Assembly: GCF_902459465.1 (NCBI RefSeq)
Contig: NC_047064.1
Coordinates: 2,976,001-3,040,000 of the forward strand
DNA: 64,000 nt
Reading direction: 5' to 3'
Source: Asterias rubens
Taxonomy: Eukaryota
Below are positions 2,542 through 28,306 of the stretch, piece after piece; position 1 is the stretch's first letter; each line of letters starts with the position of its first letter. A program made the translations under genes and the position numbers. The notes below the pieces were generated by a model, which worked only from the letters and a program-made list of their open reading frames with translations, searched no databases and was not told the origin of the DNA.

Positions 2542-3440
2542 TGGAGTTTTAAGGCGTGGTTCAAGGGCGATTGCTCTTCATTTACGACAACCCTTCTCCG
2601 AAACCCCCTTTGTAGTTTACATGCTAAAATAAAACTACGGTTTCTTGGAACAGTGTATAATGTCAGGTACTGCGACAATCTCCACATTGTGTATAGTTGC
2701 AGGAGCAGCAGTTGCAAGAAAGAGGTGTCGGAACAGTATGGTACCGAGGGGTATTGAAACATAGATGTGTATAACCTGAAGCTGTACATGGACTTATCCA
2801 GTTACTGCAAACGTGCGTCCTCCCTATATACCATAGCTAGCCATGGGAAGGGCGCTCAAGTGTAGTAACTGGATCAGAGTTCATAATTCCATTTACAGCC
2901 ACAGGCCTGCTTTGACCGAGACGACACAACCCCTTTAATTTTACAATTCTCAAGGAGATTCGCCCAAAGTTTGTTGTACAGAAAGGGAGCACAAGTCAAA
3001 TCTCAGTGTTGATATAAAAGTTCCTGGTATTGCGTTGTACCAGCCTCCCCCCCCCCCCCCACGGGTCAGAATTGACCCGGATTCTGGGTACCATGGGGGC
3101 TGGCCCATTTTAGGTTCAGATAAGCTTTTGATTGGGATTATGCGTTAGTGTTATGCCTAGATTCCCAGTTGACCCCGAAATGAATCAGACCCCACGAGAC
3201 CCAGAACCAGATAAATTTCGACCGTGGAGTTTTAAGAATATATAGGTAGAGAAAATTACCATTTCACATAATCATGCTAAGTGTGGCCAGTGTAGGATTG
3301 TGCCTGTCGGTATATGCCCTGGAATGCACACTGTTACTCTTTGGGCAAACGATAAGTTTCTACGTTGTTGCATTCTTTAGTTTATTTGATTTGTCTTTAA
3401 CCATTTCGCCTTCCTTTTACTTTTTTTCCTCATTTCTCAG

Positions 3441-3609
3441 AAATCATCCAGAAAGTGCAGCAGGGTAACAAGCCACCTTTCAGACCCACCTTAGATCGAG
3501 CCACGTGTCCAGACGAGATATGCAATTTATGTAACAAGTGCTGGGCTGAGGACCCAGCCGAGAGACCGGACTTCGGCGGGCTCAGGGTCATTATGCGAAA
3601 ACTCAACAA
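3441..3609 (+). CDS. Guanylyl cyclase exon (169 nt): end of kinase-homology domain, [57 protein letters not shown]
   Basis: Acceptor tttcctcatttctcag|AA, donor CAA|gtatgt; phase 2 matches the next exon. Confidence 0.95.
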
Positions 3610-9600: not shown

Positions 9601-12600
9601 CTTCATCAAAATAAAAATAATACAAAATCTTCAAATCAACCGCGGTTGCGCTCGTGCTCTTTGGATCAACCGTTGTTAACCCGGAAGCTTAAAAACAGCT
9701 CAACAAATTGTCAATATTATGTCAGAAAACCCTAATCTTCCGTCGATGTGTCGCGTCATGGCTGATCGTGTCATGGAACTGACTAGGTTCTTGCCTGCAT
9801 GATTGTTAAAGGGAGTGTAGTGTATAATACTTAGTAAATACTCAACACGTTAATGAACTTAGTAAAGAATATTTGAAAGCTAGCTGTTGATTTAATAACA
9901 TTGTGAGAATCGACTCCTTTGAAGTAGTTTAGTTTTAGAGAAATGGAAGAAGAATTTCCCCTGAACATTTTTAGTCCGAGAAATGCTCCATCTAACGCAT
10001 CTGAAAACACACAATTCTAAGCAGCAAGAGTATTTTTTTCTTGAATAATTCAAGAAAAAATACTATATGCTGCTTAGAATTGCAATTCGATGGCCAATTG
10101 AACCCAAGTGTTCACAGGTTTGTTATTTATGCATAGTTGGGATATACCAAGTGAGGATACCTCTCTTAAAAATTACCAAGGTGTATCCTGCTTTTAACAA
10201 CATTTCTTGATGCAAACCAGTTGCTGTTTTTATTATAGGCCCTCTATCAACAGCTACTTTGACACATTTTTCTACTGAAGACGATCACAGCATACTGATT
10301 GAAACGTAGAATTGTTACACTCTTATTCAGTACCGCCACAATCCAAGAGCGAAAATGGTACCGCGGCAAACCCAAGTTTTTTAAATTGTTGCATATTAAC
10401 TGAAGACGATCGTTACATACTGATTTATACTTTAAATCGTTGAACCCTTTTCCATAATCCAAATGAGCGAAAATGTACCGCGATAGATCCCAAACTCTAG
10501 AATTGCAAGGGTCGTGGGTTCGAACCCCACCCGAGTAACATGCCTGTGATATTTTTTTCACGTGGCTAGGGAAAGTACTGAGTATACAGTGCTAACACAC
10601 ATCGGTGTATGGGTAAAAACCAAAATTAATATTCTTTATCCCCGATGCAAATTTAACATCTATTAGATCCCAAACTGTTTAAATTATTGCATATTTACCC
10701 TTATGTTTGTTCTTTTAAAACAGAGCAGTTGCTGAGGAACTGAAGAAAGGTAAACCTGTGACGGCTGAAACGTTTGAGAGTGTCACCATTTACTTTAGTG
10801 ATATCGTTGGTTTTACAAGTCTCTCTTCAGAAAGTACACCGTTACAGGTGAGTATCATAAGGCGGTCGAGTAAATTACAGGGAAACATTGCCTTCAGACC
10901 CGGTGCTTTTGTCTATAAAAGTATTTGCTTTTAAATGAACAGGCTGTGGTTGGAAAAACATTCCAAAAGTAGAATACAATTATCCACATAAATATCACTT
11001 GAAATTGTGTGATTTTTGGTCTGCTTTTTTGTAGAACCAACTCTTATAAGCTCACAAATTGTGTGGCCTTATCCTGACAAAAGTAAACCTGACAAAGGTA
11101 TTGGTAAATAATAATAACTTGTTTTCTTTGTTCCATCGTATAGGTGGTTGATCTGTTGAACGATCTGTACACCTGTTTTGATTCTATCGTCATGAACTAC
11201 GACGTTTACAAGGTGAGGGAACACTTTCGAATTTTTAAGGCACTGGACACTATTGGTGGTCACTGTTAGCATGTTAGTATATAACGTTGTGAGAAACGGC
11301 TCCCTCTGAAGTAACGTAGTTTTCGAGAAAGAAGTAATTATCCACGAATTTGATGTCGAGACCTCAGAATTAGATTTTGAGGTCTCGAAATCAAGCATCT
11401 GAAATCACACAACTTCGTGTGACAAGGGTGTTTTTTCTTCCATTATTATCTCGCAACTTGGACGACCAATTGAGTTCAAATTTTCACAGGTTTGTTATGT
11501 TATTCGTCTGTTGAGATACACCAAGTGAGAAAACTGATCTTTGACAATTACCAAAGGTGTGCAGTGCCTTTAAGCAACTTGATTCATCTTGTGTTCAGCT
11601 ACCATTTTAGGATTTATCAAAAGAGAGGTTTATACATCAGCCGCTGCGCAGCCATTTTTGTTTATTTCCCATTGACACCAGTGACATGAAACCGAGACTT
11701 GGTGGTGAAAATAGGAAATAGGTCGGTTCTTTTCTCTCGCTAGAATGGGTATCAGTATTCATAATAGCAACGTCATAATGTGAACACGCCAAAGAAATAC
11801 TGTCAGTAGACTTGGACCTAATGTGCTGAAAACTTCTCTGCAACTATGCACTACTTGCTTTGAAAATTGCATTGCATTGGAAATTAATCACCACTGCAAG
11901 TGGTTGTTGAAGTCAATCATCTGCCTGGTTAACACCGTTAGAGGTCGAGCAGCAAGGCGTTGAGGCCGGGTATTTTATTACAATTAGGTGACTATTTCAG
12001 TGATAAAAACGAGTTAAGAATCCACCAACCGTGCAGGGATGGTGCCAGCAAATCCCACACCGAAACGGCCCTGGAACAAGTATCAATTTTCTTGCCTATA
12101 TACAAAAATGGCTGATCCCGATGAGCTACGCATCAATCCCATTACAGTTTAAGGTCATCTTCCTCTATTGCGTGTGCTGCTAAGATATTATTAACAGGAC
12201 ACCTGCGTTCGGCTGATATTCGGTGGTCGTTAGTAGTTAATTCAGAGACAATATCCTGTCAAACGTTAACACTATTCGGTGAGTGATCCCCGGTGGATTG
12301 CAAGACTTGATCACTATCGTGATACCGGGTTGCGGTGCCTGTATCCGGCGGCGGGTCTAGATCGAGGCGGTCTGCTCCACCCCTAGAGACCCCGTACTTT
12401 CTGTAGATTGAATTACAAGATAGATCGAATATGGGTGATGATATCCAAAGTGGTTTGTTTCGCTATTTTTGGTTGGGAACTAGAGAGAATTACTGAATCG
12501 ATCCGTTTTCTTAAGATTGTTTTTAAAGGTATTATAATTGATTGGTATAAGGATAAGACAAGACTAGTCTTTGACAATTACCAATAGTGTCCAGTGTCTT

Positions 12601-15600
12601 TGAGTCTGAAAGCTTGCTGATTATGAAGTTCATACTACAACCATTGTTTCTGTGAAATGAAGTCTGAAGTCATTCGAGAAAACTGTTTAAGTCACCTGGA
12701 AGTGGTATTTTGTCAAATAAAGCTTTTGTCGCTAAAATATGTGTTTTGATGAGTGGAATATGAATAAACAATTAACTAAGGTTTTGAAAAACTAGTTTCC
12801 ATGTTATTTACAAACTTGAAACTAAGCCCGACCCGAGAGGGCGCTGTTCGTGACGTCAATCGAGGCGCGATGAATCGCATTCAGTGCCAACACAAGATAG
12901 TGACGCTTGGCGCAAGCTGAAAACATGCCCTCAAAGTTGAACAATACCTGATTTTGTTCACGTTAAGCAAATGCTCCTTCAGGTTCGTTACGTCTTGCAG
13001 GTACCTTCTTCGACTTCCCACTTGCTGGGAAAATTGTTGGGATGGCTTCATGTTTTAGAACAGAACGTTTCTCTTCATGTCAAAATGTGTAGTGTATTCC
13101 GGATTCTCGAAGCACGACGGCTCGAAGTGTTTGCTGCACAGCGCTGGGAAAGACGTCGGACCGGACCACTTTGCAAACTGACCCCATCTTTAGTTGTTTT
13201 GCTGCATCCAGCAGCTATACACATGGTCGACATTGCCGGAAAAATGCAAGAGAAAACCTTTTTCGAAACGTACAAAATCTTGAATGTACATGTACTAGCA
13301 CGTACGTGTGTTCGATGTTCGATCGAGGCAAAGTCTGCCACACATCTTTATTTATTTTGTGTGTAATGAAGAATTGTTTAGGAGTTGTAGAGGCATATTT
13401 TCTCATTCAAAGTTGCACTTGACAATGTCTACTTGTCTCCAATAATAATATTAAAATAATAATATACACGCATGCTTCCTTTAGATTGGAAAAGGTTCAA
13501 TATTTTTTGATAGACGCGCAAACGCCCTTTTGAAAGTACACAGTACCAGCGAGAAAACATGTCTCTGGGGAAGAGGTTGAATCTCCTTTAAGTGCATCTG
13601 TTCTAATCAATACTCGCTGCGTTATTTTTACACGGACCTCGTAATGAAACGAGATATGCATGTATTCGATGGGGTCCCATTGCGGGTTCTTCAACAAACG
13701 TTATTCTGTCACCCACCCTCAATACGTTAGTGACAGTGTAAACACATCTATACGCGGGAATAAGGTTTCAAACGGTAATTTTATCGTCTGTTTGCATTGG
13801 GCAAACAAAAATATGTTTTCGGATATAAATTTAGAAAATGTCTGTATTGCAAACATTTAAAAAGCAATTCAGTTGCAACAGTGAGTCAGTGGTAAGGGGC
13901 ATATCTTGTGTCACCTATTGTATTTTATGAGCTGTGCTTCTTTTGTTCTGTATGTTGATCGAAAATACAAGAGCCTGAACGGTTCTCGAAACCTTTAGCT
14001 GTCGTTCAGAGTTCGGCAAGATATTTCTTGTCTTTTGGGATTCACATGGGGAGCAATGTTTTGATTGCATTGTAAAACACACCAATATTTGTTGTTATAA
14101 GTAAGCTGTTGTTGGTCTTTCAACAACATTTACGAATTGAATACCTTAATAAATCAGTGGAACAGAACTTCAAAACCCTTAGAGGGCAGGTACACGTTTG
14201 GTGATTGTCAAAGACCAGTACTCCCCCTTGGTGTATCCCAACATCAGCATAAAATAATAATCCTGTGAACGCTTGAGCTAAATTGGTCATCGAAGCTGCG
14301 AGAAAATAATGAGAGAGAAAACACCTTTGTTGGACGAATTTATGTGCTTTCAGATAGGAATAATAGACTTTTGGCTAGAAGTCTTTTCGTGAGAAATTAC
14401 CTCTTTCTCAAAATCTTTGCTACTTCAGAGGGAGTCGTTTCTCACAATGTTTTATACTATCAACAGCTCTCCAATGCTCTTCACCAAGTCAGTTTTTAAG
14501 TTAGTTATGTTTTGAGTAATTACCAAACATGTACCTTCCATTTAAGGGGTAACTATAGTGTACTCGAATGAATTTATTTTACTGGAGACGAGCAGAGCAT
14601 ATACGAAACGTTGAGATTTGTAAATGCGGATGGTCAGGTTATTAGCGTAGTGATATCTTCCCTCGCCTTCAATCTTTATAGGACCCGGTTCGAGTCACGC
14701 CGGGGGCACTATATACGTGAATTGGGTTTTCAGTCCCTACCTGATTGGTTTGGTTTCCCTAGTTAAATACTCTTGGGTTTTTCTTCTCATAAACTAAAAC
14801 TCACTTCCTTACTTCTTGGCGTATAAAGTTATTTAAGTTCGCTTTTCTGTTAGTCATTGGCTTCACAACAGAGTAGTTGAAAAAACAATGAAGTGAAAAT
14901 TATTCAAACCATTAAACAAAAAGTGTCTACAATCGGATTTTAAATCACCATATATGTTATTATGTAAATGGTTGATCACACAGAACATGACCACTGTCTG
15001 CGACTATTTGGTGAGCTCTACCAATCCTTTACAGAGCTTTAACTCCAACTTCAACGTTTCTTTGATGGATCGACCGAGTTTGTCTTTAAAACTGTTTGTG
15101 TTTGTTTGGTTTCAGGTTGAGACGATAGGTGATGCGTACATGGTGGCATCTGGCTTACCTGTACGGAATGGGGACTTCCATGCCAGAGAGATTGCCCGCA
15201 TGTCTCTCGCTCTTCTGAATGCTATCAAAAGCTTCAAGATTCGACATAAACCAGACAAAACGCTCATGCTGCGAATTGGTTTGCATTCAGGTAGGTTTAA
15301 TGAGTGGTAGTTAACCCTCTCCATCATGACCCCGCCACCACCACAAACAGCAGCTACAACAACAACAACAAAAGCAACAGTAACAACAACAACACTGAAT
15401 ACATATTGATAACATCTATATCAGTGCAAATCCTTCAGAGAAATAATGTCACATTGAATCAACTAGCTTTTACCAGGACCACCACCACCAACAACAACAA
15501 CAACAAAAACATCAACAACTTTAAATACTGATCAATAAAAATGTGTACCAGTACCAATCCTTTAGAGAAATTAATATCGTCAAATTAGATCAACTAGCTT

Positions 15601-18600
15601 TTACAGACCCACATTTATCTCCGAAGGTTTTTTTTTTTCGATTGTCTCTTTCCCACCTTAGGGCAGCCTCTGTTTGTTCTTCTTTGATTTTGTTGTTGTA
15701 AATGTTCCAGATTACTGATGATAGTTTGTTTACTGCTTTGCAGAAGAATGGGACACCAAAAGCCATTTTGAGGTATGATGGACACTAAACTGTAAGGTTG
15801 GGGTAAATCTGTCTGTATACACCCAACCCACACAGTGCACTCCGATAGTGTCCACCCTATCTCAAAAGGCTAATTGTCTCTCTGCTCAACTGTCGGAAAT
15901 ACAGTCCAATCAGTCACTAAGCTGTGCAGGAAACAAACCGTGATGTCATACAGCGGTCTATTGCTATTGCTTTCTTGTATTAATGTATCTCAAAAAGGAG
16001 GATTGACATTGCAACGTGGCAACCAGCTAGTTATCTGAATCACACTAATTTATTTCGTTCTATGGTTATCAACCTTTCGACATTTTACCCTCAAGTACAA
16101 AGTGGCTGCTGGTTTTTTGTATATGTGCTCACAAAGTTCGCCTAACCATATTACTCAAACGAGATCTTTATCTCTTTATGCACTTTAGACTTGACTCAAG
16201 TCCCAATCCCGTGCCGTCCCCAGAAAACTACTGTTTTGTGATGTTCTGCATTCCCAAATCTGTCCGGCATTCTCGGGACAGCGCGCACTGTAATGCTTAT
16301 TACGGGTTGTATCATAGTATAAGATGACGTGATATTATGCTTAGGGACCTCTCACGTGAGAATGGGACTTGAATCAAGTCTATAATATGACTTGTACTTT
16401 TGGCAACTCAACACGTGCCGATGTTGTTTAATTTACCATGGTGATCGTGATGCCAGCTTGTTTCCTTCAGCCACCCACTCGAAACACGATTGCTTTTCTT
16501 AGAGTGGGTAGTGGTTCGTGTTTGATTAATCCCTGGTAATAACACAAACAAAATGTTCAAGTTTAATAACGACTTTCTCCTAGGTGATGTTTTAAGGTGT
16601 TCTCTTTAAGGATGCGGTTTATTGACGAATGACTCTTGGGGCAGTCAAGCAATCCAAAGAGCAATATTGGAGTCAGGAACCCATAATATTGAGACCCTTA
16701 AAATGCACGAAACACTAAATTAAATTTGTTGGTTGATTACTATTAGATTTAAGGGCAGTTACTTAGTTTTCTTAGAAGCGACTGCTTCTTCTTGGGCAAG
16801 ACATTTTTGTATGGAGAAAATCGATTTCATGCGCTGAAAAATATCGACATGCAAAATGTTATTGTCTATTGTCTGAGTGTCCTGTTTATGTTGTTTGATA
16901 GTCCATCAGGTATCTCAAAACAAGCCTAGGCTTCTAGATGATGCCTTCATTAACTGTATTAATATACTATTCTTTACCTTGTAAAATAGCACTGTTTATT
17001 GATTACTCCTTTATTATAAATTATTGTTTCTATTGTTTTCATGAAGTATGGAAATAAGAGTGAATCGAAACATGTCTTATAGGCCTACATGGATACATTT
17101 TTTTCTGCAGCCTTTAAAAATAGCTAGTCATCAAAAATTTGAGGCCTATCATTAACAAATACTGTATTTTTCATTGGATTTTTTTTGATATTAGCCTCTA
17201 GTTATATTATATAAATCATGTCCCCATAATGTAATATTATGTACAGTTCATTAATATAGAGCAATGGCTCACTGGACAAAGTGACACAAACTACCGGCAT
17301 TCACCATAATGTCATTAATATGTTTTCCTTCATGACCTTTACGTCAAAACTCGTTTTCCGCTAGGTTAGGCTTCGATGGGAATAAGATTGGTTGTTGATG
17401 ATGTCCATAGGTTAGATGTTCAGTTCAAACTTTGACATCAAGAACATGCTAGTTGTCGGGCCTGGAGTAACATATTGGCCACGAAGATGCCATATGTTGC
17501 CCCTGTGTGGCCCTTGTTGCCCTTGAAAAGTTTCCCATAATTTTATAGACTTTAAGATTTTTCTAATGGAAGTGCCCTTTGTAAAATAAAAACGACCTTG
17601 CCCCTTCCAAGATGTAAATTCCAGGCCTGAGTTGCAATTAAATTTCTCGATGTCACTCAAAATTAGAATTGATTTTTGTTGCGCGATGTTTCTTTCTGCA
17701 GGTCCTGTGGTGGCTGGAGTGGTTGGTTTAAAGATGCCCAGATACTGTCTTTTCGGAGACACAGTAAACACAGCATCACGTATGGAATCAAATGGAGAAG
17801 GTTAGCATCAACCTCTTGCTCTTTTTCCAGTCCTTTCCCTAACCCCCCTTAATAGCAAACGTGTGCAGATTTAATTTGCTGAATCGTTTTGATAATCACA
17901 GAGTGTATAAAATACAAGGTTTTTGTGAGAATCGACGACCAGATAGTTGTTATAAAAGCTGACAAATAATCACCATAGAAAGTTCCAGTGGCCAATTCTC
18001 TCTCTCGTAAACCACATTCCTCAGAAGGGAATTGCTTCTCAAAATTAGGCCTTTATGTTCATGGAATGTTGGAGCAAAGGTAGGCCCAACACACTGTGGA
18101 ATATATATTTAACAGATAAAACAAACAAACTTTCAGAGACTGTTCATCATAGTGTGTTTATTGAAAACAAGCAAATTTGGAAACAATACTTTATTACTAC
18201 ATATCACAAAGCTCTACTTTCCACTTAAACTGTGTCATCAATATTTTTGTGCACAGTTGCACATTATCTGGTATCTCCATTCTGACGGTCAGGGTTGGAG
18301 ATCTGACCATGGTGTTTTTCGCTGTACATTGTTTCACATGAGCATCTACAAATGCAATCTGTTTGCATTTCTACACACATGTAATTTTCAACTCCGCCCC
18401 TATGCCCCGCACGTTATTTGTCTCACAGCTACAAAGATGTTCATTTTATTACCGTCTACACATTCATGTTTACGAGGCGTGTGCTAAAGGTCGACTGCGG
18501 TGGTGACAACCTCCAAAAAATATGCAATTTAATTTCGTCCTGCCTTGCTCAATTTCAAAAAATTACGACTTTCATTGCAAAGTTAATTATGGTTGCTCAA

Positions 18601-20809
18601 TCCGATAACCGTACCTCGTGCGTAACGTAGCCACTCGTACGTGACTTTCACAAACACCTAAGGGTGCCGCGTTATACAGGGTTGCCGGGTGTATAGGCTT
18701 CAAACTGCCGAATGTGGTGTGGAGCTCAGGCTCATTGACAGGCTTCCAGAAGACCTGAGACTAATTTCACTGGCAGGATATAGCGACGGATGCACCTCCA
18801 AATTGGCTAGTTTGATGGTCATTGTCAGCCAAGGCCGAATAGACTTTGCCTGCGGGGTGATGTCGTTCGTGCCGTCACCTGCCCCGAGTTTCCGGCAGGT
18901 TGCGAGGCCTGAGAGGCGGTGATATGCCGCCCCGGGATTTTGACAGTTGCTGAAATGGTCACGGTCTTTCTCTCTACTGATAGATGACAACAATGGGTTT
19001 CTACGATTTGAAATGAAGCCTTCTTTGGTTTATAATTAGGCTTCCCCCGTAGGCAATCTTAGATCCTCCTAGACTATACCTGTTCCCAATCACAGCAACT
19101 GGTGTCAGTATTTTTTAAAGGGGACGTTAACTTTGCTTGCGGAACCATTCGATTGATTTAATCCTGTATAACTTTATAAAATACAACTTGCTAAACATTT
19201 AACTTCAAAATGTGATAACGTTTTTTAGAGATATCGCCCAAATAAAATGGAGCGGTGGGAATCCGTCATTGTAAACAAAATCTTAGTCAAACGTGTTATG
19301 TAGAAGTCTTTCTCATATTGAAATGTTTTTGAATCCCTCTCTCTAAAATCACATTCCTTTGAAGGGAATCGTTTCTCAAAATAATATACATTATCAACAT
19401 CTGCAGTGCTTATTACTGGAGGATGTTATGGTCATTAATTTTCTGTAAATTGTCACAGGTAAACATCACAGGTATACCTCCCTTTAACCAAGGTTTTTCT
19501 AATTCACCAGTAAACAGGAAAATATACATGTACTGTTATTTTATTGGTTTAATAATTTTGTTATTTTATTTCCACAGCTATGAAGATTCATATGAGCTCC
19601 TACATCAAGAAAATCCTCGATCTGTTTGGCACTTTCGTGATCGAACTCAGGGGTGAAGTTGAAATGAAGGTAAAATATTGTTACATCCAACCTCGTCCCC
19701 CATCACCACATTTACATACTATTTTCAAATTTATAGTCACTCTTTAGATATGATTTTGAAAATAGTAATGATTTTAAACACACTTTTGGGTGGCTTAGTG
19801 GACTGTTTTGTAACTGTCTCGTCTGTCCTCAGTGATAGATATTTTTTAGCACTTGTTTTACAAAGACATTTTAGAAAATGCATTTGTTAAAAATAGATGC
19901 AATTTCAGATGTGGGATCTCCATTAAAATTGTTGGCTTCTTTTGTGTGTTATTCACGAATGAATTGGCGAGAGAAAATAGATTTGACCTTTTGGGATTAT
20001 ATCGATTTTCAAAATAGAATTGCTTGAATATTAAATGACTCTTTATCCTGCATTGTCGAGAAGACGTTCAGAGCGCAATGACCTAAACGTTGAGCAGTAC
20101 GAACCGGCTCTTCTGAGAGCCATCACTACTCACAAAAGAGACTTTACATAGTCACTGTAAACCAAAGATCGGCGCTATACGATCTTTGCTGTAAAACCTT
20201 ACTTAAAGACCTGCTTGAACGAAAATGTCAAGTCGTGAACTTTGCTGAATTCCACTTAAAATGTTTTCGATGAATAAGGAAATCGAATCATATGATTCTA
20301 AATAGGTTTCAATTGTGTAAAAAAACAATCATTTTGTATGCCCTTGTCCAGAGCTTTTCTGCGAGATTTGCGAAAAGCCCCGTTACGTAATCACTCTCAA
20401 AACGTCATAAGTAGATAAAGCCGCTTTGTTGCAGCGTGGATGTATAACAAAGCAAACTCCCACAAATGACGTCAGCGGCATTGTCCTTTGACGCCCGCTC
20501 TCAACGGCAGAAGTGTTTTTAGTTTTTCAAAAAACCTTTAGGTAGGGGCCTGATTTTTACTCGATAATTACGAAAAGTTCAGAAGTGTACACATATCAAA
20601 ATTACATTAAAATGGTGAACAAGTGCATTATAAACAAGTAAAAATACCATTTCTGTTGAAAACATTCCGCTCAGGTAGCTGTTTAATTGGCTTTTTATCC
20701 GCTGTTCTTATTCCAGGGGAAGGGTAAACAGACGACGTATTGGCTGAAAGGAGAGCTGAAAGACAAGAACGGATTATGCGATTTTAAATATCAGGAAATT
20801 TCCGTGTAA
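3441..20809 (+). CDS. Receptor-type (membrane) guanylyl cyclase, NPR1/NPR2-like; 3' part of gene (8 coding exons, 5' exons outside window)
   Basis: Eight exons join in frame with GT..AG introns. They give the kinase-homology end ([12 protein letters not shown]), coiled coil ([24 protein letters not shown]), and cyclase motifs [46 protein letters not shown]. The Glu in ETIGD and Cys in YCLFGD are the established guanylyl-specificity residues. Confidence 0.96.
4792..5172. mobile_element. Kolobok-like MITE, unrelated interior
   Basis: TTAA|AGGAACAATACAGAGTTG ... CAGATTCTGTAACGTTCCT|TA imperfect TIRs. Confidence 0.55.
7404..7553 (+). CDS. Guanylyl cyclase exon (150 nt): coiled-coil/signalling helix, [50 protein letters not shown]
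   Basis: Acceptor tttcctcag|A, donor TAG|gtaaga; typical receptor-GC dimerisation helix. Confidence 0.96.
7826..8057. mobile_element. Harbinger-type MITE with CAG TSD
   Basis: cag|TGCCCAATTTCATGGC ... GCCATGAAATTAGGCC|cag. Confidence 0.7.
8248..8398. mobile_element. Palindromic MITE
   Basis: CTTAAACTGCCGTTT / AAACGGCAGTTTAAG and further paired arms. Confidence 0.65.
9806..10197 (+). mobile_element. K1 MITE, degenerate
   Basis: Diverged but alignable, ending aattaccaaggtgtatcctgcttttaa. Confidence 0.65.
10270..10700 (+). repeat. ~125-bp tandem repeat with degenerate hammerhead-like motifs (CTGAAGAC at 10275 and 10400), interrupted by the tRNA-containing element
   Basis: TTCTA-CTGAAGA-C-GATCA-CAGCATAC-TGATT-GAAAC-G-TAGAA; repeated GAGCGAAAATG(G)TACCGCG and TTAAATT.TTGCATATT. 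Confidence 0.65.
10497..10663 (+). mobile_element. 5'-truncated copy of the 258-bp tRNA-containing retroelement with 13-bp TSD
   Basis: TAGATCCCAAACT at 10484-10496 and 10664-10676; body nearly identical to the 49.3-49.8 kb units. Confidence 0.85.
10724..10847 (+). CDS. Guanylyl cyclase exon (124 nt): [41 protein letters not shown]
   Basis: Acceptor ttcttttaaaacag|A, donor CAG|gtgagt; contains the first metal-binding Asp (FSDIVG). Confidence 0.97.
11144..11212 (+). CDS. Guanylyl cyclase exon (69 nt): [23 protein letters not shown]
   Basis: Acceptor ttccatcgtatag|G, donor AAG|gtgagg. Confidence 0.97.
11235..11573 (+). mobile_element. K1 MITE, 22 bp downstream of a cyclase exon
   Basis: TTAA|GGCACTGGACACTATTGGT ... 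GTGCAGTGCCT|TTAA. Confidence 0.85.
12687..13345 (-). mobile_element. Truncated DNA-transposon remnant carrying the THAP pseudo-exon
   Basis: Left end TTAAGTCACCTGGAAGTGG resembles a TTAA-flanked terminus; internal GAGGGCGC and TGACGTCA motifs; second terminus not found. Confidence 0.5.
12948..13233 (-). pseudogene. THAP zinc-finger pseudo-exon, probably the N-terminus of a Kolobok- or P-type transposase
   Basis: [20 protein letters not shown] / (frameshift) [22 protein letters not shown]... / (frameshift) [11 protein letters not shown]...GAFA*REQNQ|gtattg. This is a C-x4-C...C-x2-H plus AVPTIF-type THAP signature, disrupted. Confidence 0.8.
14179..14545 (-). mobile_element. K1 MITE, reverse orientation
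   Basis: Reverse complement of the K1 internal sequence; TIR-like ends with TTAA at right. Confidence 0.8.
14631..14880 (+). mobile_element. tRNA-derived SINE, family S1 (V-core-like centre)
   Basis: Shared GGACCC.GGTTCGA and GATTGGGTTTTCAGTCCCTACCTGA with copies at 56170, 57405 and 62622. Confidence 0.6.
15116..15290 (+). CDS. Guanylyl cyclase exon (175 nt): [58 protein letters not shown]
   Basis: Acceptor tttggtttcag|G, donor CAG|gtaggt; second metal-binding Asp and guanine-specifying Glu. Confidence 0.97.
15330..15610. repeat. (AAC)n/(ACC)n microsatellite inside a ~130-bp tandem duplication
   Basis: Two AAC tracts, each followed by CAGT.CAA.TCCTT.AGAGAAAT...ATCAACTAGCTTTTAC. Confidence 0.75.
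16186..16382. mobile_element. MITE with 20-bp TIR
   Basis: TAGACTTGACTCAAGTCCCA ... TGGGACTTGAATCAAGTCTA. Confidence 0.7.
17702..17800 (+). CDS. Guanylyl cyclase exon (99 nt): [33 protein letters not shown]
   Basis: Acceptor tttctttctgcag|GT, donor AAG|gttagc; catalytic N/R and GC-specific Cys. Confidence 0.97.
19578..19669 (+). CDS. Guanylyl cyclase exon (92 nt): [31 protein letters not shown]
   Basis: Acceptor ttatttccacag|CT, donor AAG|gtaaaa. Confidence 0.96.
20203..20686. mobile_element. Kolobok-like MITE in the last cyclase intron
   Basis: TTAA|AGACCTGCTTGAACGAAAATGT vs ACATTCCGCTCAGGTAGCTGT|TTAA imperfect TIRs; internal TGACGTCA. Confidence 0.6.
20717..20809 (+). CDS. Guanylyl cyclase terminal coding exon: [30 protein letters not shown]
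   Basis: Acceptor gttcttattccag|GGG; GKG...TYWL motif; TAA stop at 20807-20809. Confidence 0.95.
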   Translation, partial: GKGKQTTYWLKGELKDKNGLCDFKYQEISV

Positions 20810-22240
20810 TCTTGGGGGAAAACAGTGTTAAGGGACTCCAGTGTATAAAAAACAAATGTCTTAGAAGAAGAAAAATTCCAAATAAATACATGCCTTCCTT
20901 TGAGATTTGCATTTTAACAAAAATTCATATTATGTGTACATGTAAATACATTACAAAAGACTAACTGTGACGCGACTGGACCAACGTGTTGACCTGCAAA
21001 CTGTGACAGTGACCTTTTATTGAATATTCATGACGACAGGCGCGTGCACTGCGATAGACACGCCCACATTTCTTTTCTGACTCACGGACAGTGACTTTAA
21101 TTAAAGAGACATTCACATAATGTTTACAGACAAACGTTCGACTAGACTACAACTTCTGGAACTGAACTCTTAACTTTTTACTGACCACAGACCGTCGTGA
21201 AACCACTGTTAGTCGTATTATGAGGACGTGGGACAGAGGACGGTGACAAGGGTGACAAACGCAAGCAAGTTGACGAGACATTTGACTGTGACAACATGCA
21301 CATCTGCCATATTAGGGTCTCATACTTAAAACCAAAGCACCAAAAGTCTCCAAACCGTTAATGACAACGTGCATCTTGTGTCATGGTGAAATCTGTAAGC
21401 CGGAGATGCTGTCTCCATTATTGGAAATTATCATTAGCTGAAGGAGGATGATACAAAAGAGGGCGCTGTCAGAAGAAGTTTGCGCACAGTTCGCCGTATG
21501 ATGGGGACAGCAGAATATCCGGGGGACACAGAATCTCATGAGACACCGGGAACCAACATAGACAACTAACTGACGGACCTGACTCATGTATCATGAAGAA
21601 TTGGTTTTTTTTTTAAAGTCGATGTTTATGATGTGGTCATCTGTTGTAGGTGTCCTGTATATACAATGATTGTGAGTGTACTAACCCACGGTGTGGGTCC
21701 CAACTATTTCACTTCCAGCCTCAATTTGGTCATAATTATTTGAATGGACGAAGGGGCAAGATGGCTCAAATGGTCAGGTTCTATCTGAGCCAATTTGGAC
21801 GAACGTTATAGTCAGACCATGCATGCACGGACGACAGACTACAACTTTGTAACACTGAGTGGATATGAAGCACAGATACACATTGGTTTAACCTCGAAAG
21901 AATTAAGAGTGACTGTCGCATGATTTTAGTCTAGATTTTAGTCTAGATACAAACTGTTGCCCAGTCCAATCGATATTAATCACACACAAAAACTATCTTG
22001 TGAATGAGCGAAGCCCGCCCTGTGCTTCATATCCGATCATTCATTTCGACACAATCTCTTGGAAACGAGGTTGTTTTTGGCTGACTAACGTCATTACTGG
22101 AGACGTGACGTATCTTGTACAGTGACAGACAAGTCAAGTTTGACACAAATACTGACGTCTGACGTTAACTTTGTAAATTGTAGTGTAGTTTTGATGTTCA
22201 TGTTTCCGGTGAATAAAATTTCAGCATCGTAAAGAGAAAC
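20810..22240 (+). other. Probable 3' UTR of the guanylyl cyclase gene
   Basis: Follows the stop codon. AATAAA at 20881, 22212, 22656 and 22711. Strand-biased GAC enrichment ends just before the 22212 signal. The true 3' end is not determinable from sequence. Confidence 0.55.
22212..22217 (+). terminator. Candidate distal polyadenylation signal AATAAA
   Basis: Hexamer just after the end of the GAC-rich UTR block; alternatives at 20881, 22656, 22711. Confidence 0.4.
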
Positions 22241-23066
22241 AAATATAAGAATTCAAAAGCTGACAAAATCTCCATCATTCAGTACAATATAAATTATATA
22301 GGTAATTGAGATCACAGTCTTTTGTTTTCTTTAGTCCCAATGTAGGAGATCTGTTTTGTTTTCCTAAATTTACAAAGGAAGGCTGAATAACAATTCCTGA
22401 AATGAAAGAAGGATATTTGGAATTTGGAATTTTTTTCTCAAGGACTGTGTTGTGAATAATAGTCATACATATATTTAACGAGACTTTGGCAGTGGGATTT
22501 TTATTGCATGAAATTGTATTAAATGTGATTATGTAATCGGTCAAACCTTTCAACGTCATCGTTGGTGATGTATGTTGGGAAATGTAACAAGTGCTGTCAC
22601 CTTTGACCTCCACCGTGAATGTCGACTTTATAAAGACACAATATTAAAAGCTGTAAATAAAAATGCTCTTTCTGACTCTATGGCTGTACTTTCAAAATTA
22701 ATACATTTGGAATAAAAAAGTAATAATGATGAATACAAATTTTCAACATTTCCTGAACATGCATCCTGTTAATTTTACAGGCATGTTTAAATGGGGTAAT
22801 TAAAATAACGTGTGTATAGTACAAAGTTTATTATAGATATATGACTGACAATACTAGACTCGAAACGTCGAATCTGTTTTCGAGACAACGACGTACAATA
22901 TCCTTCCATTATCCTAGAAAGAGAACAACTCTCTGTAAAACGAACAGGTTACAAGTTTGACTAAACTAAACGTTGGTGGCAGGAACATCTGATTTATTAA
23001 TGTACATGTAGTATTTTTTATTAGCTTAAGGGGCCAATGCTTAATTTTCACCTGCTCTTGATACTA

Positions 23067-23194
23067 GGCCGTGTCCGAAACGACGACTTCGGCTACAGCT
23101 ACGTCTAGATCAGCGCGTCTACCAGTGTTGAAGAATAGCAGACGCGCGCGATCTAGCCGTAGCTGTAGCCGAAGTCGCCAATTCGGACGCGGCC
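23067..23194. mobile_element. Palindromic Harbinger-type MITE with CTA TSD
   Basis: cta|GGCCGTGTCCGAA...TTCGGACGCGGCC|cta; arms GACTTCGGCTACAGCTAC / GTAGCTGTAGCCGAAGTC. Confidence 0.8.
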
Positions 23195-26048
23195 CTATAC
23201 TACACTGGTACATGTTGTACCGCAAGCTCCTCATCTTTTATGCCCTTGTCCAAAAATGGAATCTTGTCAAGTGGGCTATTGTGACCATTACTAAATCTGT
23301 TCAGTCTAAAACGGGAAAATTGAAATTTGAATCCCACCCGCCATTGATGTAATGCAACTTAAAAACATGTTAGTCTTCTTCACAAAAGGATGTAGAGTTA
23401 ATAATAGCAACTACCCACCCACCCACCCAGCTAAATGCGTTGTTTAAAGCGTCGCAAAGGCGTGGGTTTTGATGCTAAAAAAAAGCTGCGTGCTCAAATC
23501 AAAACAAGAGAGACATCTTCTTTTTGTGTTTGTATATTTTTGAAAAACGAACTATAGAGTCTGTCTTGCTTGCAAGTTGTAACGCGTTGGCTTTGACAAC
23601 CTTTTGAAAATCGGGGTGCCCCAAGCATGTTTTGTTGCTGTTTCTTACATTTTGTGCGAAGACACAATGACTTTTTACTCTTCTGCAAAGTGGTAAACAA
23701 CCTGTGACGTCATCAGAACTGTGACGTCATCAGCACTAGGCCCTAAAGGTCTGTTAAATGAGGTATTTTGGGGCACAGCGACCTCGATGCTTTGTCCTAC
23801 TGCAGCCGTTATGAAAACGCTTCATGTTAATAAGAAGGACTAGTTGACTGCAAGTGCTATAGTCTAGTTTAGCAATGAGATTGGGTTCTCTCACAGTATT
23901 CATACTTTATTAACTCAACGTGTTTTTAATTGCCATTTTAGACAATTAGAAATCATGATAATCAACAAGTTGGGAGAGTAATTTTGTGCAACATGATAGA
24001 CTGTCAACGACGCTGTGTCCAGAATAGTCATGAATTATTTTTTATTTTTTAAACGAGAAAACATTATAATTTAAAAGGCTGCAAATAATGTTTTCTTTCT
24101 ATAATTTTAAAAAATTGTTTAATTTCTGTGTCAATTTAAATAAAGGTGAAATTGTAATATATGTGTATAATTAATTATAATGTAAATACTAAAGAAAATT
24201 GCGTTTGTGTGACTAAAACAGATTTAAGTGGTGATATGTGAAGTCAAGGTGTAAGACCTACACTGACCAGACCTTTATGTTTTTATCTGGTGTGGGGATG
24301 TTGCAATTTTTCGTAATGATTTCTTCGGATGGTTTCTTAATAATGTCGTGTATTTTTTTATGTTGAAAGCGTCAGATACTGGGTTTGACATTATAATCAT
24401 AACATTGATCATCAGAATATTGGGGCTAATAATATAATTAAAAATGGATTCATCTTTATATTCAGGAAAGATCTTTTCGAGTGAATGAAACGATCGAGGC
24501 GGCCGTTTATTTTCAAGGAAGTTCTTTCCGTTTTCTGCTCTTTTTCCCCATCACTCACAGACATCACTTCTACAGACGTTTATTTTAAGACGTTTGTTTT
24601 ACCCCCCCCCCCCCCTCCCTCGAAAATGATGTCACGTGACTGAAGAATTTCCTGCCCTTGTCACCAATATGTTTTAACGGAACATCAACAAAAACAATAA
24701 CGCCTGAGGCAAATTAAAACTACGTTTTGTTACTTTTGAAAAAAAAAACTTCTTTTGATATATACGTTTGTACAAAAAAACACATGTAATGTATTATGAA
24801 AGTAATTGAGTCTCTTTTTAGTTCAAACCTTGTTCAAGAAAGCAAAACGAAATACTCGTGGTCATTTGACAAAATCTCAAATATCTGTGAAAGTTCTCGA
24901 GTGACCCGGTTTATAATAACAGGGAAGGTTAACGGCTTTTACTTTTTAGTACGATGTAAAATCACTTGATAGTCTCCGTTCTCAAGCATTGTGAGTTATG
25001 TTTGGGTGGGGGCTAGAAACCATCAATTCTTTTGTCGCCATTTTCATAAAAAGTGAGAAGAATAATTGAAGCATCAAAATGTTATCTTTTATCTATAGAT
25101 ACAGAATGTATTGACAGGGAAAAGTGTAGCCTATAGGTGTGGTCTAGAAGAGAGTAGAAACGGCTTGCTCGCAACTTGGTAAAACTAGAGTCGATCATTG
25201 TGGTGCTAAAAACAAAACAAAACAAAAAAAAAGAGAGATGTGAATAAAAAAAACTATGTGGTTTTCTTCGGTTTAGGCCAACACGACGTAACAAATAAAC
25301 CGATTAATGGCTAGGTTGACGTGTCCAAAGTGGCTCAAACTGGTTTGAACTAGTTTGAACCGGCTTACCAAGCCAGATACAGGCCAGACTAGGCCATGTT
25401 TTTTTATACGCAGTGTTAACTGTTCTCTGTAGAAGACCCTTTGTATAAAATAAACCTGTGTATAGTTTGCTAACAATTATAGACAAAGCCATGTAGATTG
25501 CACTGTCCGAACCCTTACTTTGTATACAGTTATCATTATCCAGTGGTATTTAGCTTCGCTCTGTCACTTTCGTAAGTGACAATTTAATGGATACTTTATC
25601 TGTTTTGTAAAAAAAAAAAAAAAAAAATACTACAAAATAAAATAAAAGTTAGATTGGATCGTTTTCACTTCCGGGTTATCGTTAAAACAAATGTGTAGGT
25701 CTCTTTTAATATACATTGGTCTTTAAATACTCTAGATTTAATAAACGGTTTAAATTAGGATTATAACTTAGTAGGGTTGAACGTGTGAACTACCTTTACG
25801 TCTTCTATAGGTCATTATAGCGAGATCATTCTATAAATAAACTCGTGTTTTCCGTAGCTGATTGATTTTTTTTTAAACAAAACTTTGGGTCCGTTTCATG
25901 TAACATTTTGTAAACCTTTGTATTCAGTGGACCAATAATGCTTTGAAGAACCTCACAAATTCATTTTTCTGCGAAATGACAAAACCGTTCAAGGAGTATT
26001 GTGGATGTTACCCGACTATTGTAGATATGACGTTCTGTTTAATATCGA

Positions 26049-26158
26049 TGCAAGTCTCGCGAAATTCAAATCTTGAGACCCGTGAAAGTGCGTGAGTTTC
26101 TTTCCTTCAAAATGTAAAGCTATAAAGGGGAGACGCGCGGGGTCGAGCGAGACTTGCA
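26049..26158. mobile_element. Small MITE-like inverted repeat
   Basis: TGCAAGTCTCGC ... GCGAGACTTGCA. Confidence 0.5.
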
Positions 26159-26535
26159 CAGTCTTTTGTTTCATCTACCGCCACATTTTGGAACGGTTGT
26201 AAAACATTCTTTAATATTTGACGATAAACAGTATGTCCAATATGGGTCCATGTTTAATCCGTCAATATTAATGTACCTTTAATTATACCTTCGATCATAT
26301 TCGACCGTTCCATCTTAAAGTGGAAATTGAAATTGAAATTGAATTTTAAAACTGGTAAAGCAAAACAGCAATATCAACATGGTTAAGTTGTTTACTTGAC
26401 GTAGACGTTGCTAACGGTATGATTTTTATTGTCAGTCTTTTGACATGACATTGTTGCAGTTGCATATTATGATATTATAAATGTACGATCTTCAAGGTAA
26501 CTTTACTCAATGTAAACCAGCTCGGAGGGTTGTAA

Positions 26536-26726
26536 TTAAAGGAGCACTCTCGTCAAGATCAAAGCAGGCCTGTAGCTGTTCATGGGATTGTTAACTCTCA
26601 CCTAGATGCGCACGTGCCCTCAATGATACAGAGGGAGTGTGCGTGGGTGTTGTTACTGGGATAAGAGTACATAATTCAACGCACAGCCAAATGCCTGATT
26701 TAATCCTGACGACACAGCCCCTTTAA
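26536..26726. mobile_element. Kolobok-like MITE
   Basis: TTAA|AGGAGCACTCTCGTCAAGAT ... ATCCTGACGACACAGCCCCT|TTAA. Confidence 0.65.
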
Positions 26727-28306
26727 GCAAACCGGACCGTGAAGGACATAAGTCAGACGTATTCTATATTCATCAATATGGCAGTATTATAAATGATTTC
26801 GGTGTGTAAATTATTACTGTTGAACAAAAATCAATTTGTGTTTTTGTTTTTCGAAAAATAAAATGGTTTAATAACTTATAGTCTTGGGAATGATTTTTAA
26901 AACATTGGTAATATTTAGATGGTGATAATATTGTGTATTCACGATTTATGTATTATGTTGATAAATGACAAAAAGTAAATACATTTTAAAAAACCAGTCC
27001 AGGTAAAAGGTAAACAGAACGTGGTGTCGATGTCTTTTCTTTCTTCTTGAGTCTTTCTTCTCCTCTCTCACCAGCTAAATTTTCCTCTTTCATCGTATTT
27101 TTAAAACACCCTTCATGGCAGTTACAGGGTTCTCTCATTGTTGTTCTATTATTCCCTTTTCTTGAGAAATATTCTCTGTGGGGTACCACCGTAACAAAGA
27201 AAACCTTACAGACAAGCATTGTTCCATTCTTAAAAGTACCCCGAAAGTTGAAGACGTGTGAAAGGGCACATACGCGCAACCTTCGGATCGGGTTGGTGGG
27301 GTCCTGTTGTTGATCTAGTATTCCCTTGTCCGAGTTGAAAAACTTGGTGGTGATTACTGTTCCATTGTGTGAAAGACCCACTTGGGCTCTACTGTAAGTC
27401 CACAGCTAGCTCTCTGTTGCAGTCACTCTGTGGACATTCATTTATACATTCATTGATTTATTCACTCTCTAAAAAACTCTGTGGGACGCGGGTAAGTCCA
27501 CATAACGTTTTCGGACCGTGAAACCTCTTTTGTTCTCAGTCCACACGTCGCATGACACATGAATCTTAAGCAGCAATCTCAAGCGTTGCCGTTTTTAACT
27601 ACTGTAGGCCTAAGTGCGTCAAACTATTTTACTAAAATTGACGTTTGTCACCGATTATTTTGAATGGCTGCATCAAATTTGACTTCGACTGTGCAAAAGT
27701 GCGATGTGTAGCGCAGGCATATCTTTTAACGTCAGTTAAACATTGAATCCTCTAGCATCGTCGATGTTGCTAATTGTCGGCGCCTTCCTTTACCTATACA
27801 TGGGGGTCATGCTCTCCTGGTGCTCAGGCCTTCATTAGGGTTTCAAAACGAGCATTAAGTGTCCGTTATTAGCTCAGAACAATTAGGGCTGCTTAGAATG
27901 ACTCGTCTGGGACCATTTATCTTCTAATTTCATTGTTTAAATTTCCCTGTGGATTCTGTATATTAGATTGGTGGTTATTGATACCGGTAATTATTATTGT
28001 CACACCATTGGGGCCCACTATAGCGACCATATAATACACATCAAGAACTGCCTTTTATTTAATTATGAACTCCAAAGATACTCAAATCAACTGTGTGTAA
28101 TTTTCCTGGGAATAAGAATACTTAGACAGTAGTGTGCTGTCAAACAGAAGCCATGGTTACCCCATTTTCACTGGTCCGTTTAAATGTCCATATAAACAAG
28201 GTTATACGATGTCAACCCACTCCACCAAATTTATTTCCCAATGGCACCAAGCGCAAACTTTTAATTGACGAAACTTATCTGCTTAGCTGGGAGTAGCGGA
28301 GTATAC

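What the first reader, a model, noticed from the sequence alone, without database searches (positions are those of the whole stretch)
20941..22170. Strand-specific GAC/DRACH hyper-cluster in the cyclase 3' UTR
Seen (manual count): 28 GAC versus 2 GTC and about 26 DRACH pentamers in 20941-21300 (uniform expectation roughly 6). Further tight clusters occur at 21505-21585, 21795-21840 and 22082-22165. The flanks of each GAC are non-repetitive, so this is not a tandem repeat. Established: m6A is deposited on DRACH, enriched near stop codons and in long last exons. Inference: selection on the RNA for a dense m6A or GAC-binding-protein platform controlling cyclase mRNA stability or translation.
Basis: partly seen in the sequence, partly recalled or inferred. 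Interest (0 to 1): 0.72.

Follow-up and report, generated by a model that had tools for sequence, protein, structure and literature searches.

The report
Conserved GAC array in starfish cyclase 3'UTR
Just after the stop codon of a starfish receptor guanylate cyclase gene, the mRNA carries about 28 copies of the three-letter word GAC on one strand only; distantly related starfish keep this density even where the surrounding sequence no longer aligns, so it is probably a selected RNA docking platform whose reader is unknown.

Summary
The window average is 4.2 GAC per 360 nt, and no dinucleotide shuffle reaches 28.

The window is Asterias rubens. The gene is an NPR1-like receptor guanylate cyclase (XP_033624202.1) with its stop codon at 20807-20809. 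RNA contigs from four runs of two species join the last two exons and run on through the array, so it lies in the 3'UTR.

The array is not a tandem repeat and has no other copy in the sequence available.

- **Another sea star, 82% identical:** 24 of 28 GAC are intact, against 15.5 expected by chance (p=1.5e-4). There are 4 losses and 5 gains.
- **Patiria miniata:** the UTR gives no blastn alignment. Even so, the same place holds 41 GAC against 8 GTC, the highest GAC density in a 107-kb locus.
- **Other echinoderms:** the sea urchin, sea cucumber and crinoid orthologues have no array.

Selection on an RNA-level GAC platform is therefore supported. The m6A reading is not tested, and the evidence does not favour it over direct GAC binders such as FMRP/FXR. 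DRACH flanks are no commoner than base composition predicts, and AAC is not enriched.

The scan's earlier notes record no other GAC array in this genome.

The parts
20715..20809 (+). Last coding exon of the NPR1-like receptor guanylate cyclase; stop codon TAA at 20807-20809
   Evidence: Translation. The GT..AG joint 19667->20715 is present in RNA contigs of all 4 runs. The CDS of P0166 ends at L001 102614, which is window 20809.
20881..20902 (+). AATAAA (20881-20886) followed by the conserved word ATGCCTTCCTTTG (20890-20902), between the stop codon and the array; possibly a proximal poly(A) site
   Evidence: It lies in a block of about 45 nt that is invariant between Asterias and L002. Patiria has ATGCCTTCCCTTG at the matching distance but no canonical AATAAA. 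Use as a poly(A) site was not tested.
20959..21292 (+). Main GAC array: 28 GAC and 2 GTC, irregular spacing (mostly 5-7 nt or 10-22 nt), unique flanks
   Evidence: It is contiguous with spliced exons in RNA contigs. 24 of 28 sites are intact in L002. The fold z-score is +0.76, so it is not structured.
21506..21583 (+). Second GAC island (7 GAC, 0 GTC); contains ACTAACTGACGGAC, a 14-mer shared exactly with the start of the Patiria array
21798..21839 (+). Third GAC island (5 GAC)
   Evidence: It lies in the 5' arm of a predicted structured domain, 21790-22180 (z=-3.48).
22083..22163 (+). Fourth GAC island (8 GAC, 3 GTC); several sites are TGACGT
   Evidence: It lies in the 3' arm of the same predicted structured domain.
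22591..22900 (+). Weaker GAC-enriched stretch (9 GAC, 3 GTC)
20810..25610 (+). Likely extent of the long 3'UTR. RNA contigs cover 20715-21479, then 21454-23094, and in organism D run on to about 25605, next to a genomic A18 run
   Evidence: pieces table; sequence. Assembly breaks at two repeats and the contigs carry no strand, so continuity beyond about 21470 is inferred.

Best explanation
The block is a selected, RNA-level array of GAC words in the 3'UTR of a sea-star receptor guanylate cyclase mRNA. It starts about 150 nt after the stop codon. About 28 GACs, one every 13 nt on average, sit in a stretch that is predicted to be largely unpaired. Smaller islands follow downstream.

The proposed mechanism is a multivalent docking platform. 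Many weak three-letter sites together give high avidity for an activity that recognises single-stranded GAC. This activity would then set the fate of the long-UTR mRNA: storage, translation or decay.

My split of the possible readers within this explanation:
- about 0.35: the m6A writer complex followed by YTH-type readers
- about 0.3: direct KH-type GAC binders of the FMRP/FXR family, which are also reported as m6A readers
- about 0.1: an SR protein of the SRSF7/9 type
- the rest: an unknown protein

Shown: the enrichment, its strand, its presence in the mRNA, and its conservation. Inferred: that a protein or writer binds it, and what that does.
For: 1. The enrichment is extreme and strand-specific. 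28:2 in Asterias, 29:2 over the 497-nt UTR piece of L002, and 43:8 in Patiria 97591-98300. No dinucleotide shuffle reaches the observed count.
2. It is in the sense mRNA. In four RNA runs of two species, contigs carrying the exon-exon joint 19667->20715 continue to about 21470. L002 is a cDNA-like contig from another sea star with joined exons and the array.
3. Purifying selection acts on the words. In the Asterias-L002 alignment (82% identity), 24 of 28 GAC are intact, against 15.5 +/- 2.3 if the 63 changed sites were scattered at random (p=1.5e-4). Four losses and five gains leave the totals at 28 and 29. Of the 19 organism-D substitutions listed in 20941-21300, one falls in a GAC.
4. Density is conserved without alignable sequence. 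In Patiria miniata, blastn aligns only the coding exons and a distal block. Yet 97601-98300 holds 41 GAC and 8 GTC, and the densest GAC window of the 107-kb locus (24 per 360 nt, mean 4.0, sd 2.5) lies within 250-610 nt of the stop.
5. The two species share GAC-bearing words with no reverse complements: GACA 19 and 16 (rc 0 and 0), GACAG 7 and 9 (rc 0 and 0), ACTAACTGACGGAC, ACAGTGACAGAC.
6. The arrays are no more structured than shuffles. The z-score is +0.76 in Asterias and +1.55 in Patiria, as expected for a single-stranded platform.
7. Readers of GAC exist. RNAcompete and CLIP give GAC for the FMRP/FXR KH domains, and the authors note the overlap with RRACH (PMC5001617). SRSF7 binds GAY triplets and SRSF9 binds GACGAC (PMC9022966).
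Against: No binding, methylation or reporter data exist for this array.

The contigs carry no strand. An antisense transcript is not formally excluded, and downstream contig depth is 3.4 times the CDS contig depth in run X12.

Only three sea-star lineages could be examined. The Acanthaster and A. amurensis loci could not be fetched. Part of the Asterias-L002 similarity is plain shared ancestry.

The third and fourth islands lie in a predicted structured domain (z=-3.48). Not all GACs are therefore likely to be single-stranded.

I could not scan the genome, so I do not know whether such arrays are rare among sea-star UTRs. The only indication is that no other GAC note exists among 2100 notes on 782 windows.
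Confidence: 0.68

Rival explanations
1. Specifically an m6A hyper-methylation platform. Each GAC is a METTL3/14 target in a long last exon, and the many m6A marks recruit YTH readers to control decay or translation.
For: GAC is the core of DRACH, and there are 26 DRACH in 360 nt. The array lies near the stop codon in a long last exon. In mammals that is where m6A is deposited (established knowledge, not tested here). The main array is unstructured.
Against: DRACH flanks are not selected: D-GAC-H is 20 vs 17.1 expected in Asterias and 22 vs 26.4 in Patiria. GACG, which is not DRACH, makes up 13 of 43 sites in Patiria. UGAC is the commonest context in Asterias (13 of 28), not GGAC (5). The other RAC word, AAC, is not enriched. 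A sea cucumber MeRIP study reports RRAAACW-type motifs (PMC11987279).
Confidence: 0.25
2. A DNA-level cluster of transcription-factor half-sites downstream of the gene, acting as an enhancer. Candidates are TGACAG (Meis/TGIF type), TGACG (CRE/bZIP type) and TGACC (nuclear-receptor half-site).
For: TGAC is the commonest four-letter context (13 in the main array). TGACG, GACAG and TGACTCA all occur. Conservation of site density with sequence turnover is also typical of enhancers.
Against: Binding sites in enhancers work in either orientation. Here the reverse complements are almost absent (2 of 30, 2 of 31 and 8 of 51), and GACA, GGAC and GACAG have none in either species. All four bases precede GAC, so the unit is not TGAC. 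The block is inside the mature mRNA.
Confidence: 0.1
3. A neutral relic: a decayed microsatellite or minisatellite (for example GACAGT-like units), a transposon fragment or a local mutational bias, with no function.
For: Short related words recur: GACAGTGAC twice, CTGTGAC three times and GTGACAA three times. Other parts of this UTR do contain inserted repeats (21376-21509 and 23062-23195).
Against: TRF finds no array even at score 30, and the GACs show no phase or period. Contig depth over the array is flat and matches the flanking transcript. There is no other copy in 280 kb of sea-star sequence. GACs are kept more than their surroundings (p=1.5e-4). Patiria holds the same density at the same place after the flanks have diverged beyond blastn detection, which a decaying relic would not do.
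Confidence: 0.05
4. An SR-protein (SRSF7/9-like) element of GAC triplets that controls the choice between the proximal poly(A) site at about 20881 and the distal site about 4.8 kb downstream.
For: SRSF7 binds GAY triplets and regulates proximal poly(A) site use, and SRSF9 has a GACGAC motif (PMC9022966). The array starts about 70 nt after a conserved AATAAA.
Against: GAU is not enriched in Asterias (1 against 28 GAC), although the motif is GAY. From memory, the Schwich et al. 2021 paper cited there places SRSF7 sites upstream of the proximal site, whereas this array is downstream. I did not check this in the text I read. Patiria lacks a canonical AATAAA at that place.
Confidence: 0.1

Closest known systems
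Clusters of m6A consensus sites (DRACH) in long last exons and 3'UTRs
   Same: The core word is GAC. The array lies just after the stop codon in a long terminal exon, with many sites close together on the RNA strand.
   Different: The flanks are not DRACH-biased and AAC is not enriched. The density, about one site per 13 nt over 330 nt, is far above ordinary UTRs. No methylation data exist for this array, and MeRIP in another echinoderm gave an AAAC-type motif (PMC11987279).
FMRP/FXR KH-domain GAC motif (RNAcompete and CLIP; PMC5001617)
   Same: It is a three-letter GAC recognition unit, for which one word alone gives little specificity and many together could. GACA is the top four-letter word in both sea stars.
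   Different: Reported FMRP sites are scattered, mostly in coding regions. No dense array of this kind is described, and binding by the echinoderm homologue is untested.
Homotypic short-motif arrays read by RNA-binding proteins, such as Nova YCAY clusters (recalled from memory) and the GGAU array downstream of starfish SRSF1/9
   Same: The architecture matches: many copies of a 3-4-letter word at irregular spacing, on one strand only, with unique flanks. The density is conserved more than the exact sequence.
   Different: The word is different (GAC) and the gene class is different (a membrane receptor, not a splicing factor regulating itself). The location is the 3'UTR, not an intron or a poison exon.
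SRSF7 (9G8) GAY-triplet elements (PMC9022966)
   Same: GAC triplets, including GACGAC at 21032 and 21830. There is a link to alternative polyadenylation.
   Different: GAU is not co-enriched, and the array lies downstream of the candidate proximal site.

Membership tests
m6A DRACH site cluster | Sites conform to DRACH (D before the R, H after the C) more often than chance allows | tested here: not met
   D-GAC-H is 20 vs 17.1 expected (Asterias), 19 vs 17.7 (L002) and 22 vs 26.4 (Patiria). GACG makes up 30% of the Patiria sites.
m6A DRACH site cluster | Location in a long internal or terminal exon, near the stop codon or in the 3'UTR | tested here: met
   The array starts 150 nt after the stop, inside a terminal exon that RNA contigs show to extend at least 660 nt and probably about 4.8 kb past the stop.
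m6A DRACH site cluster | The adenosines are actually N6-methylated | not testable with these tools
   This needs direct RNA sequencing, GLORI or miCLIP.
FMRP/FXR KH-domain GAC sites | Single-stranded GAC core | tested here: met
   GAC is the only enriched trinucleotide core. The main array is predicted to be unstructured.
FMRP/FXR KH-domain GAC sites | Bound by the FMRP/FXR homologue | not testable with these tools
   This needs CLIP or a pull-down in sea-star tissue.
SRSF7 GAY-triplet element | Both GAC and GAU triplets, often adjacent | tested here: not met
   GAU 1 against GAC 28 in the main array. Only two adjacent GACGAC pairs in 20941-22170.
Tandem repeat, minisatellite or transposon fragment | A repeat unit with a period, or other copies in the genome | tested here: not met
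   TRF finds none at score 30. There are no long direct repeats. Contig depth over the array is flat and matches the flanking transcript, unlike the repeats beside it. No other copy turned up in the window, L001 or L003.
Transcription-factor site cluster (enhancer) | Sites occur in both orientations | tested here: not met
   28:2, 29:2 and 43:8; binomial p below 1e-6 for the core arrays.

The most novel reading that the evidence does not exclude
Sea stars evolved a regulatory device specific to their class. It is a multivalent GAC array in the long 3'UTR of a receptor guanylate cyclase mRNA, and it nucleates a GAC-reading assembly (FMRP/FXR-type, m6A-dependent or not) that stores or silences the mRNA until it is needed. 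The array has been kept by turnover of individual sites since the sea-star orders split. That split is roughly 200 million years old by my recollection, which I did not check here. If such arrays mark a set of co-regulated mRNAs, this would be a new kind of 3'UTR code.
Probability: 0.2. Interest if true: 0.8.

Novelty: new variant of a known kind. Interest (0 to 1): 0.62.

Why it matters
Most 3'UTR elements are known as single sites of 6-8 letters. Arrays of a three-letter word, where density is conserved but sequence is not, are hard to find by alignment and are rarely described. A full-text search for 'GAC-rich' together with UTR returned only two papers, neither describing such an array.

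This array is clean: about 14:1 strand bias, unique flanks, and presence in two sea-star orders but not in urchin, sea cucumber or crinoid orthologues. Patiria oocytes and embryos can be injected, to my knowledge. It is therefore a practical test case for a wider question. GAC is shared by the m6A consensus and by the FMRP/FXR motif, and this array could show which of the two actually reads GAC in an invertebrate deuterostome.

The gene belongs to the receptor cyclase family that includes echinoderm sperm chemoreceptors. I did not test whether it is one of them.

Tried and rejected
**Rejected readings**
- Coding sequence or an Asp-rich alternative exon: GAC starts show no frame bias (9/7/12), and only short ORFs occur.
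- Known RNA family: an Rfam E-value scan of 19000-27000 finds nothing in the array.
- A miRNA site cluster: ACTGTGA occurs 3 times and GTGACAA 3 times. The enrichment holds for GAC with every flank, so a single seed cannot explain it. I did not trust seeds recalled from memory.
- Pairing of GAC islands with the GUC-rich spacers: 21495-21794 has z=+0.57. Only 21790-22180 is structured.

**Searches that led nowhere**
- The first homologue search used a crinoid representative and did not list the window's own protein. tblastn of the hits against the window then identified Asterias.
- The Acanthaster and A. amurensis loci could not be fetched. Isoforms were not on record, or the gene ranges of 254 kb and 380 kb were too long.
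- P0348 turned out to be an N-terminal short isoform, so one look-up was wasted.
- The species behind assembly GCA_014845345.1 (L002) could not be named.
- ORFs of 110 aa or more in 26-64 kb have no Pfam match, so no second 3'UTR was available in the window for comparison.
- The read laying list of substitutions is truncated, so the test with organism D is only indicative.

Full report
**What the window is.** The stretch 19500-26000 is 100% identical to locus L001, a piece of the Asterias rubens assembly GCA_902459465.3 that the look-up of encoding contigs returned for protein P0166. P0166 is XP_033624202.1, 'atrial natriuretic peptide receptor 1-like'. Its kinase-homology, dimerisation and cyclase exons lie at about 3440-3610, 7399-7554, 10722-10850, 11120-11218, 15101-15292, 17653-17799, 19576-19667 and 20715-20809. 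The stop codon TAA is at 20807-20809.

**The observation.**
- In 360-nt windows across the 64 kb, the mean is 4.15 GAC (sd 2.6). The next highest count on either strand is 12.
- Across the 112.6-kb locus L001, which holds the 92-kb gene, the next highest GAC count is 13.
- Mononucleotide shuffles give 5.4 GAC. Dinucleotide shuffles give 16.5 with a maximum of 25 in 2000, even though the GA and AC dinucleotides are themselves inflated by the motif.
- GAC is the core. It is by far the most enriched trinucleotide (p about 1e-14). All four bases occur before and after it. GAU (1), AAC (11) and GAG (4) are not enriched.
- The further clusters are real: 7:0 in 21501-21590, 5:1 in 21791-21845 and 8:3 in 22079-22170. 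A weaker one, 9:3, lies in 22591-22900.
- The spacers between the islands are GAC-poor and rather GTC-rich: 4 GAC against 15 GTC in 633 nt. The feature is therefore a main array followed by islands, not one 1.2-kb block.

**Not a repeat and not coding.**
- Tandem Repeats Finder finds nothing in the array at score 30.
- The direct repeats found are words of 10-26 nt.
- GAC spacing is irregular and GAC starts have no codon phase.
- No other copy exists in the window, L001 or the Patiria locus.
- Contig depth over the array is flat and equals that of the coding contig. Real interspersed repeats beside it stand out by a hundredfold: 20170-20705 in the intron, 21376-21509 and 22984-23251 in the UTR.

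**It is in the mRNA.** In four RNA runs from two related species, a contig carries the GT..AG joint 19667->20715 and continues without a break to 21466-21479. There the assembly stops at the repeat. Further contigs of similar depth cover 21454-23094. In organism D they run on to about 25605, beside a genomic A18 run. The 3'UTR is therefore at least 660 nt long and probably about 4.8 kb.

Contigs carry no strand, and in run X12 the downstream contigs are 3.4 times deeper than the coding contig. An overlapping second transcript beyond about 21.5 kb is therefore not excluded.

An AATAAA at 20881-20886 lies in a block of about 45 nt that is invariant between Asterias and L002. It may be a proximal poly(A) site, which would make the array specific to the long isoform. 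Its use was not tested, and Patiria has no canonical hexamer there.

**Conservation in another, unnamed sea star.** Protein P0275 led to L002, a 1295-nt contig of assembly GCA_014845345.1. It has joined exons, so it looks like cDNA, and it carries 497 nt of UTR. Its UTR holds 29 GAC and 2 GTC.

In a pairwise alignment of the array, 82% of Asterias positions are unchanged. Of the 28 Asterias GACs, 24 are intact. If the 63 changed positions were scattered at random, 15.5 +/- 2.3 would be intact (p=1.5e-4). Four GACs are private to Asterias and five to L002, which leaves the totals at 28 and 29.

Of the 19 organism-D substitutions that read laying listed within 20941-21300, one falls in a GAC, although GACs cover 23% of the positions. 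That list is truncated, so this is only indicative.

**Conservation in a different order.** The Patiria miniata orthologue is P0340, at locus L003, with its stop codon ending at 97471.
- blastn aligns it to Asterias only over the coding exons and over a distal block.
- Even so, 97601-98300 holds 41 GAC and 8 GTC.
- The densest GAC window of the whole 107-kb locus (24 per 360 nt; mean 4.0, sd 2.5) starts 250 nt after the stop.
- Dinucleotide shuffles of 97591-98300, which holds 43 GAC and 8 GTC, never reach the observed 43 (mean 28.1, maximum 40).
- The two species share GAC-bearing words far beyond expectation, with no reverse complements: GACA (19 and 16), GACAG (7 and 9), GACAGA, ACGGAC, the 14-mer ACTAACTGACGGAC and the 12-mer ACAGTGACAGAC.
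- Both arrays open with GACTAACTG(T)GACG, at 128 nt after the stop in Patiria and 149 nt in Asterias.

**Absent outside sea stars.** A sea urchin mRNA contig (L008, 1139 nt of UTR) has 14 GAC and 8 GTC, which is unremarkable. A holothurian mRNA contig (L011, 527 nt) and the crinoid Anneissia locus (L012, 3 kb after the stop) show no array at all. The array is therefore specific to sea stars, as far as I could sample.

**What it probably does.** The strand bias, the position inside the mRNA and the preferential retention of the words point to selection on the RNA, not on the DNA. So does the maintenance of density after the flanks have diverged. The main arrays are no more structured than shuffles (z=+0.76 in Asterias, +1.55 in Patiria), which suits a single-stranded platform. 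A three-letter word gives little affinity or specificity alone, so the array most likely works through many sites acting together.

**Which reader.**
- *m6A.* GAC is the core of DRACH, and the position near the stop in a long last exon fits m6A. Against it, DRACH flanks are no commoner than composition predicts. GACG is frequent in Patiria. UGAC is the leading context in Asterias, not GGAC. AAC is not enriched. A sea cucumber MeRIP study reports RRAAACW-type motifs (PMC11987279).
- *FMRP/FXR.* Their KH domains bind GAC in RNAcompete and CLIP, and the authors themselves note the overlap with the m6A consensus (PMC5001617). This fits a flank-free GAC core.
- *SRSF7/9.* SRSF7 binds GAY triplets and affects proximal poly(A) choice, and SRSF9 has a GACGAC motif (PMC9022966). 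But GAU is not enriched here, and the array lies downstream of the candidate site.

**Rivals.**
- An enhancer built of TGAC-type half-sites is disfavoured by the near absence of reverse complements and by the lack of a fixed base before GAC.
- A decaying repeat is disfavoured by the tests above and by Patiria.

**Novelty.** Arrays of short RNA motifs are a known kind of element. The scan has already noted a GGAU array downstream of SRSF1/9 in this genome (s1-150251, not tested here). I found no description of a GAC array of this density with its density conserved across sea-star orders. No other GAC note exists among the scan's 2100 notes on this genome. I file it as a new variant of a known kind. 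Its function remains to be shown.

Noticed in passing
window 20101-20145 (+), with 20170-20705: A histone 3' stem-loop-like match (Rfam RF00032, 29.8 bits, below the gathering score of 34) lies in the last intron, next to a repeat whose RNA contig depth is 100-1000 times that of the gene.
   Followed up: no
window 21376-21509: An interspersed repeat sits inside the 3'UTR, with contig depth 900-7000 against about 16. A 63-nt copy lies on the other strand at 33890-33952. It breaks all transcript assemblies at this point.
   Followed up: partly
window 23062-23195: A palindromic MITE-like insertion in the 3'UTR. It is absent from organism D's RNA contigs (clean joint 23061->23196) and highly repeated in all runs.
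   Followed up: partly
window 25262-25742, matching L003 100964-101444: A non-coding block about 4.5 kb after the stop is conserved between Asterias and Patiria (67% by blastn, with long invariant words such as AGGTTGACGTGTCCAAAGTGGCTC and CACTTCCGGGT). It could be the distal end of the long 3'UTR or a promoter-like element. RNA contigs of organism D end beside the A18 run at 25611.
   Followed up: partly
window 21790-22180: A predicted structured domain (z=-3.48). A closing helix pairs 21791-21817 with 22155-22180, and an inner 20-nt inverted repeat pairs 21856-21875 with 22020-22039. It holds the third and fourth GAC islands. It may be an old inverted-repeat element or a folded RNA domain.
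   Followed up: partly
window 20890-20902; L003 about 97543-97555: The word ATGCCTTCCYTTG is conserved between the stop codon and the GAC array in Asterias, L002 and Patiria. Its function is unknown.
   Followed up: no
L002 (GCA_014845345.1, contig JACSEG010030388.1): This genome-assembly contig has three exon-exon junctions already joined, plus part of one intron upstream. It is either a processed retrocopy or cDNA carried into the assembly.
   Followed up: no
upstream of the window (gene models): The A. rubens model has 829 aa. A separate 262-aa 'NPR3-like' A. rubens protein (P0272) clusters with the 1092-aa A. amurensis protein, whose gene spans 380 kb. The A. rubens annotation probably splits one very long gene in two.
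   Followed up: no
window 20941-22170: ACTAAC, the STAR/SF1-type word, occurs 4 times against 0.29 expected. Three of the four sit at or inside a GAC island (20960, 21566, 22086); the fourth lies in a spacer (about 21682). Patiria has one at the start of its array.
   Followed up: partly
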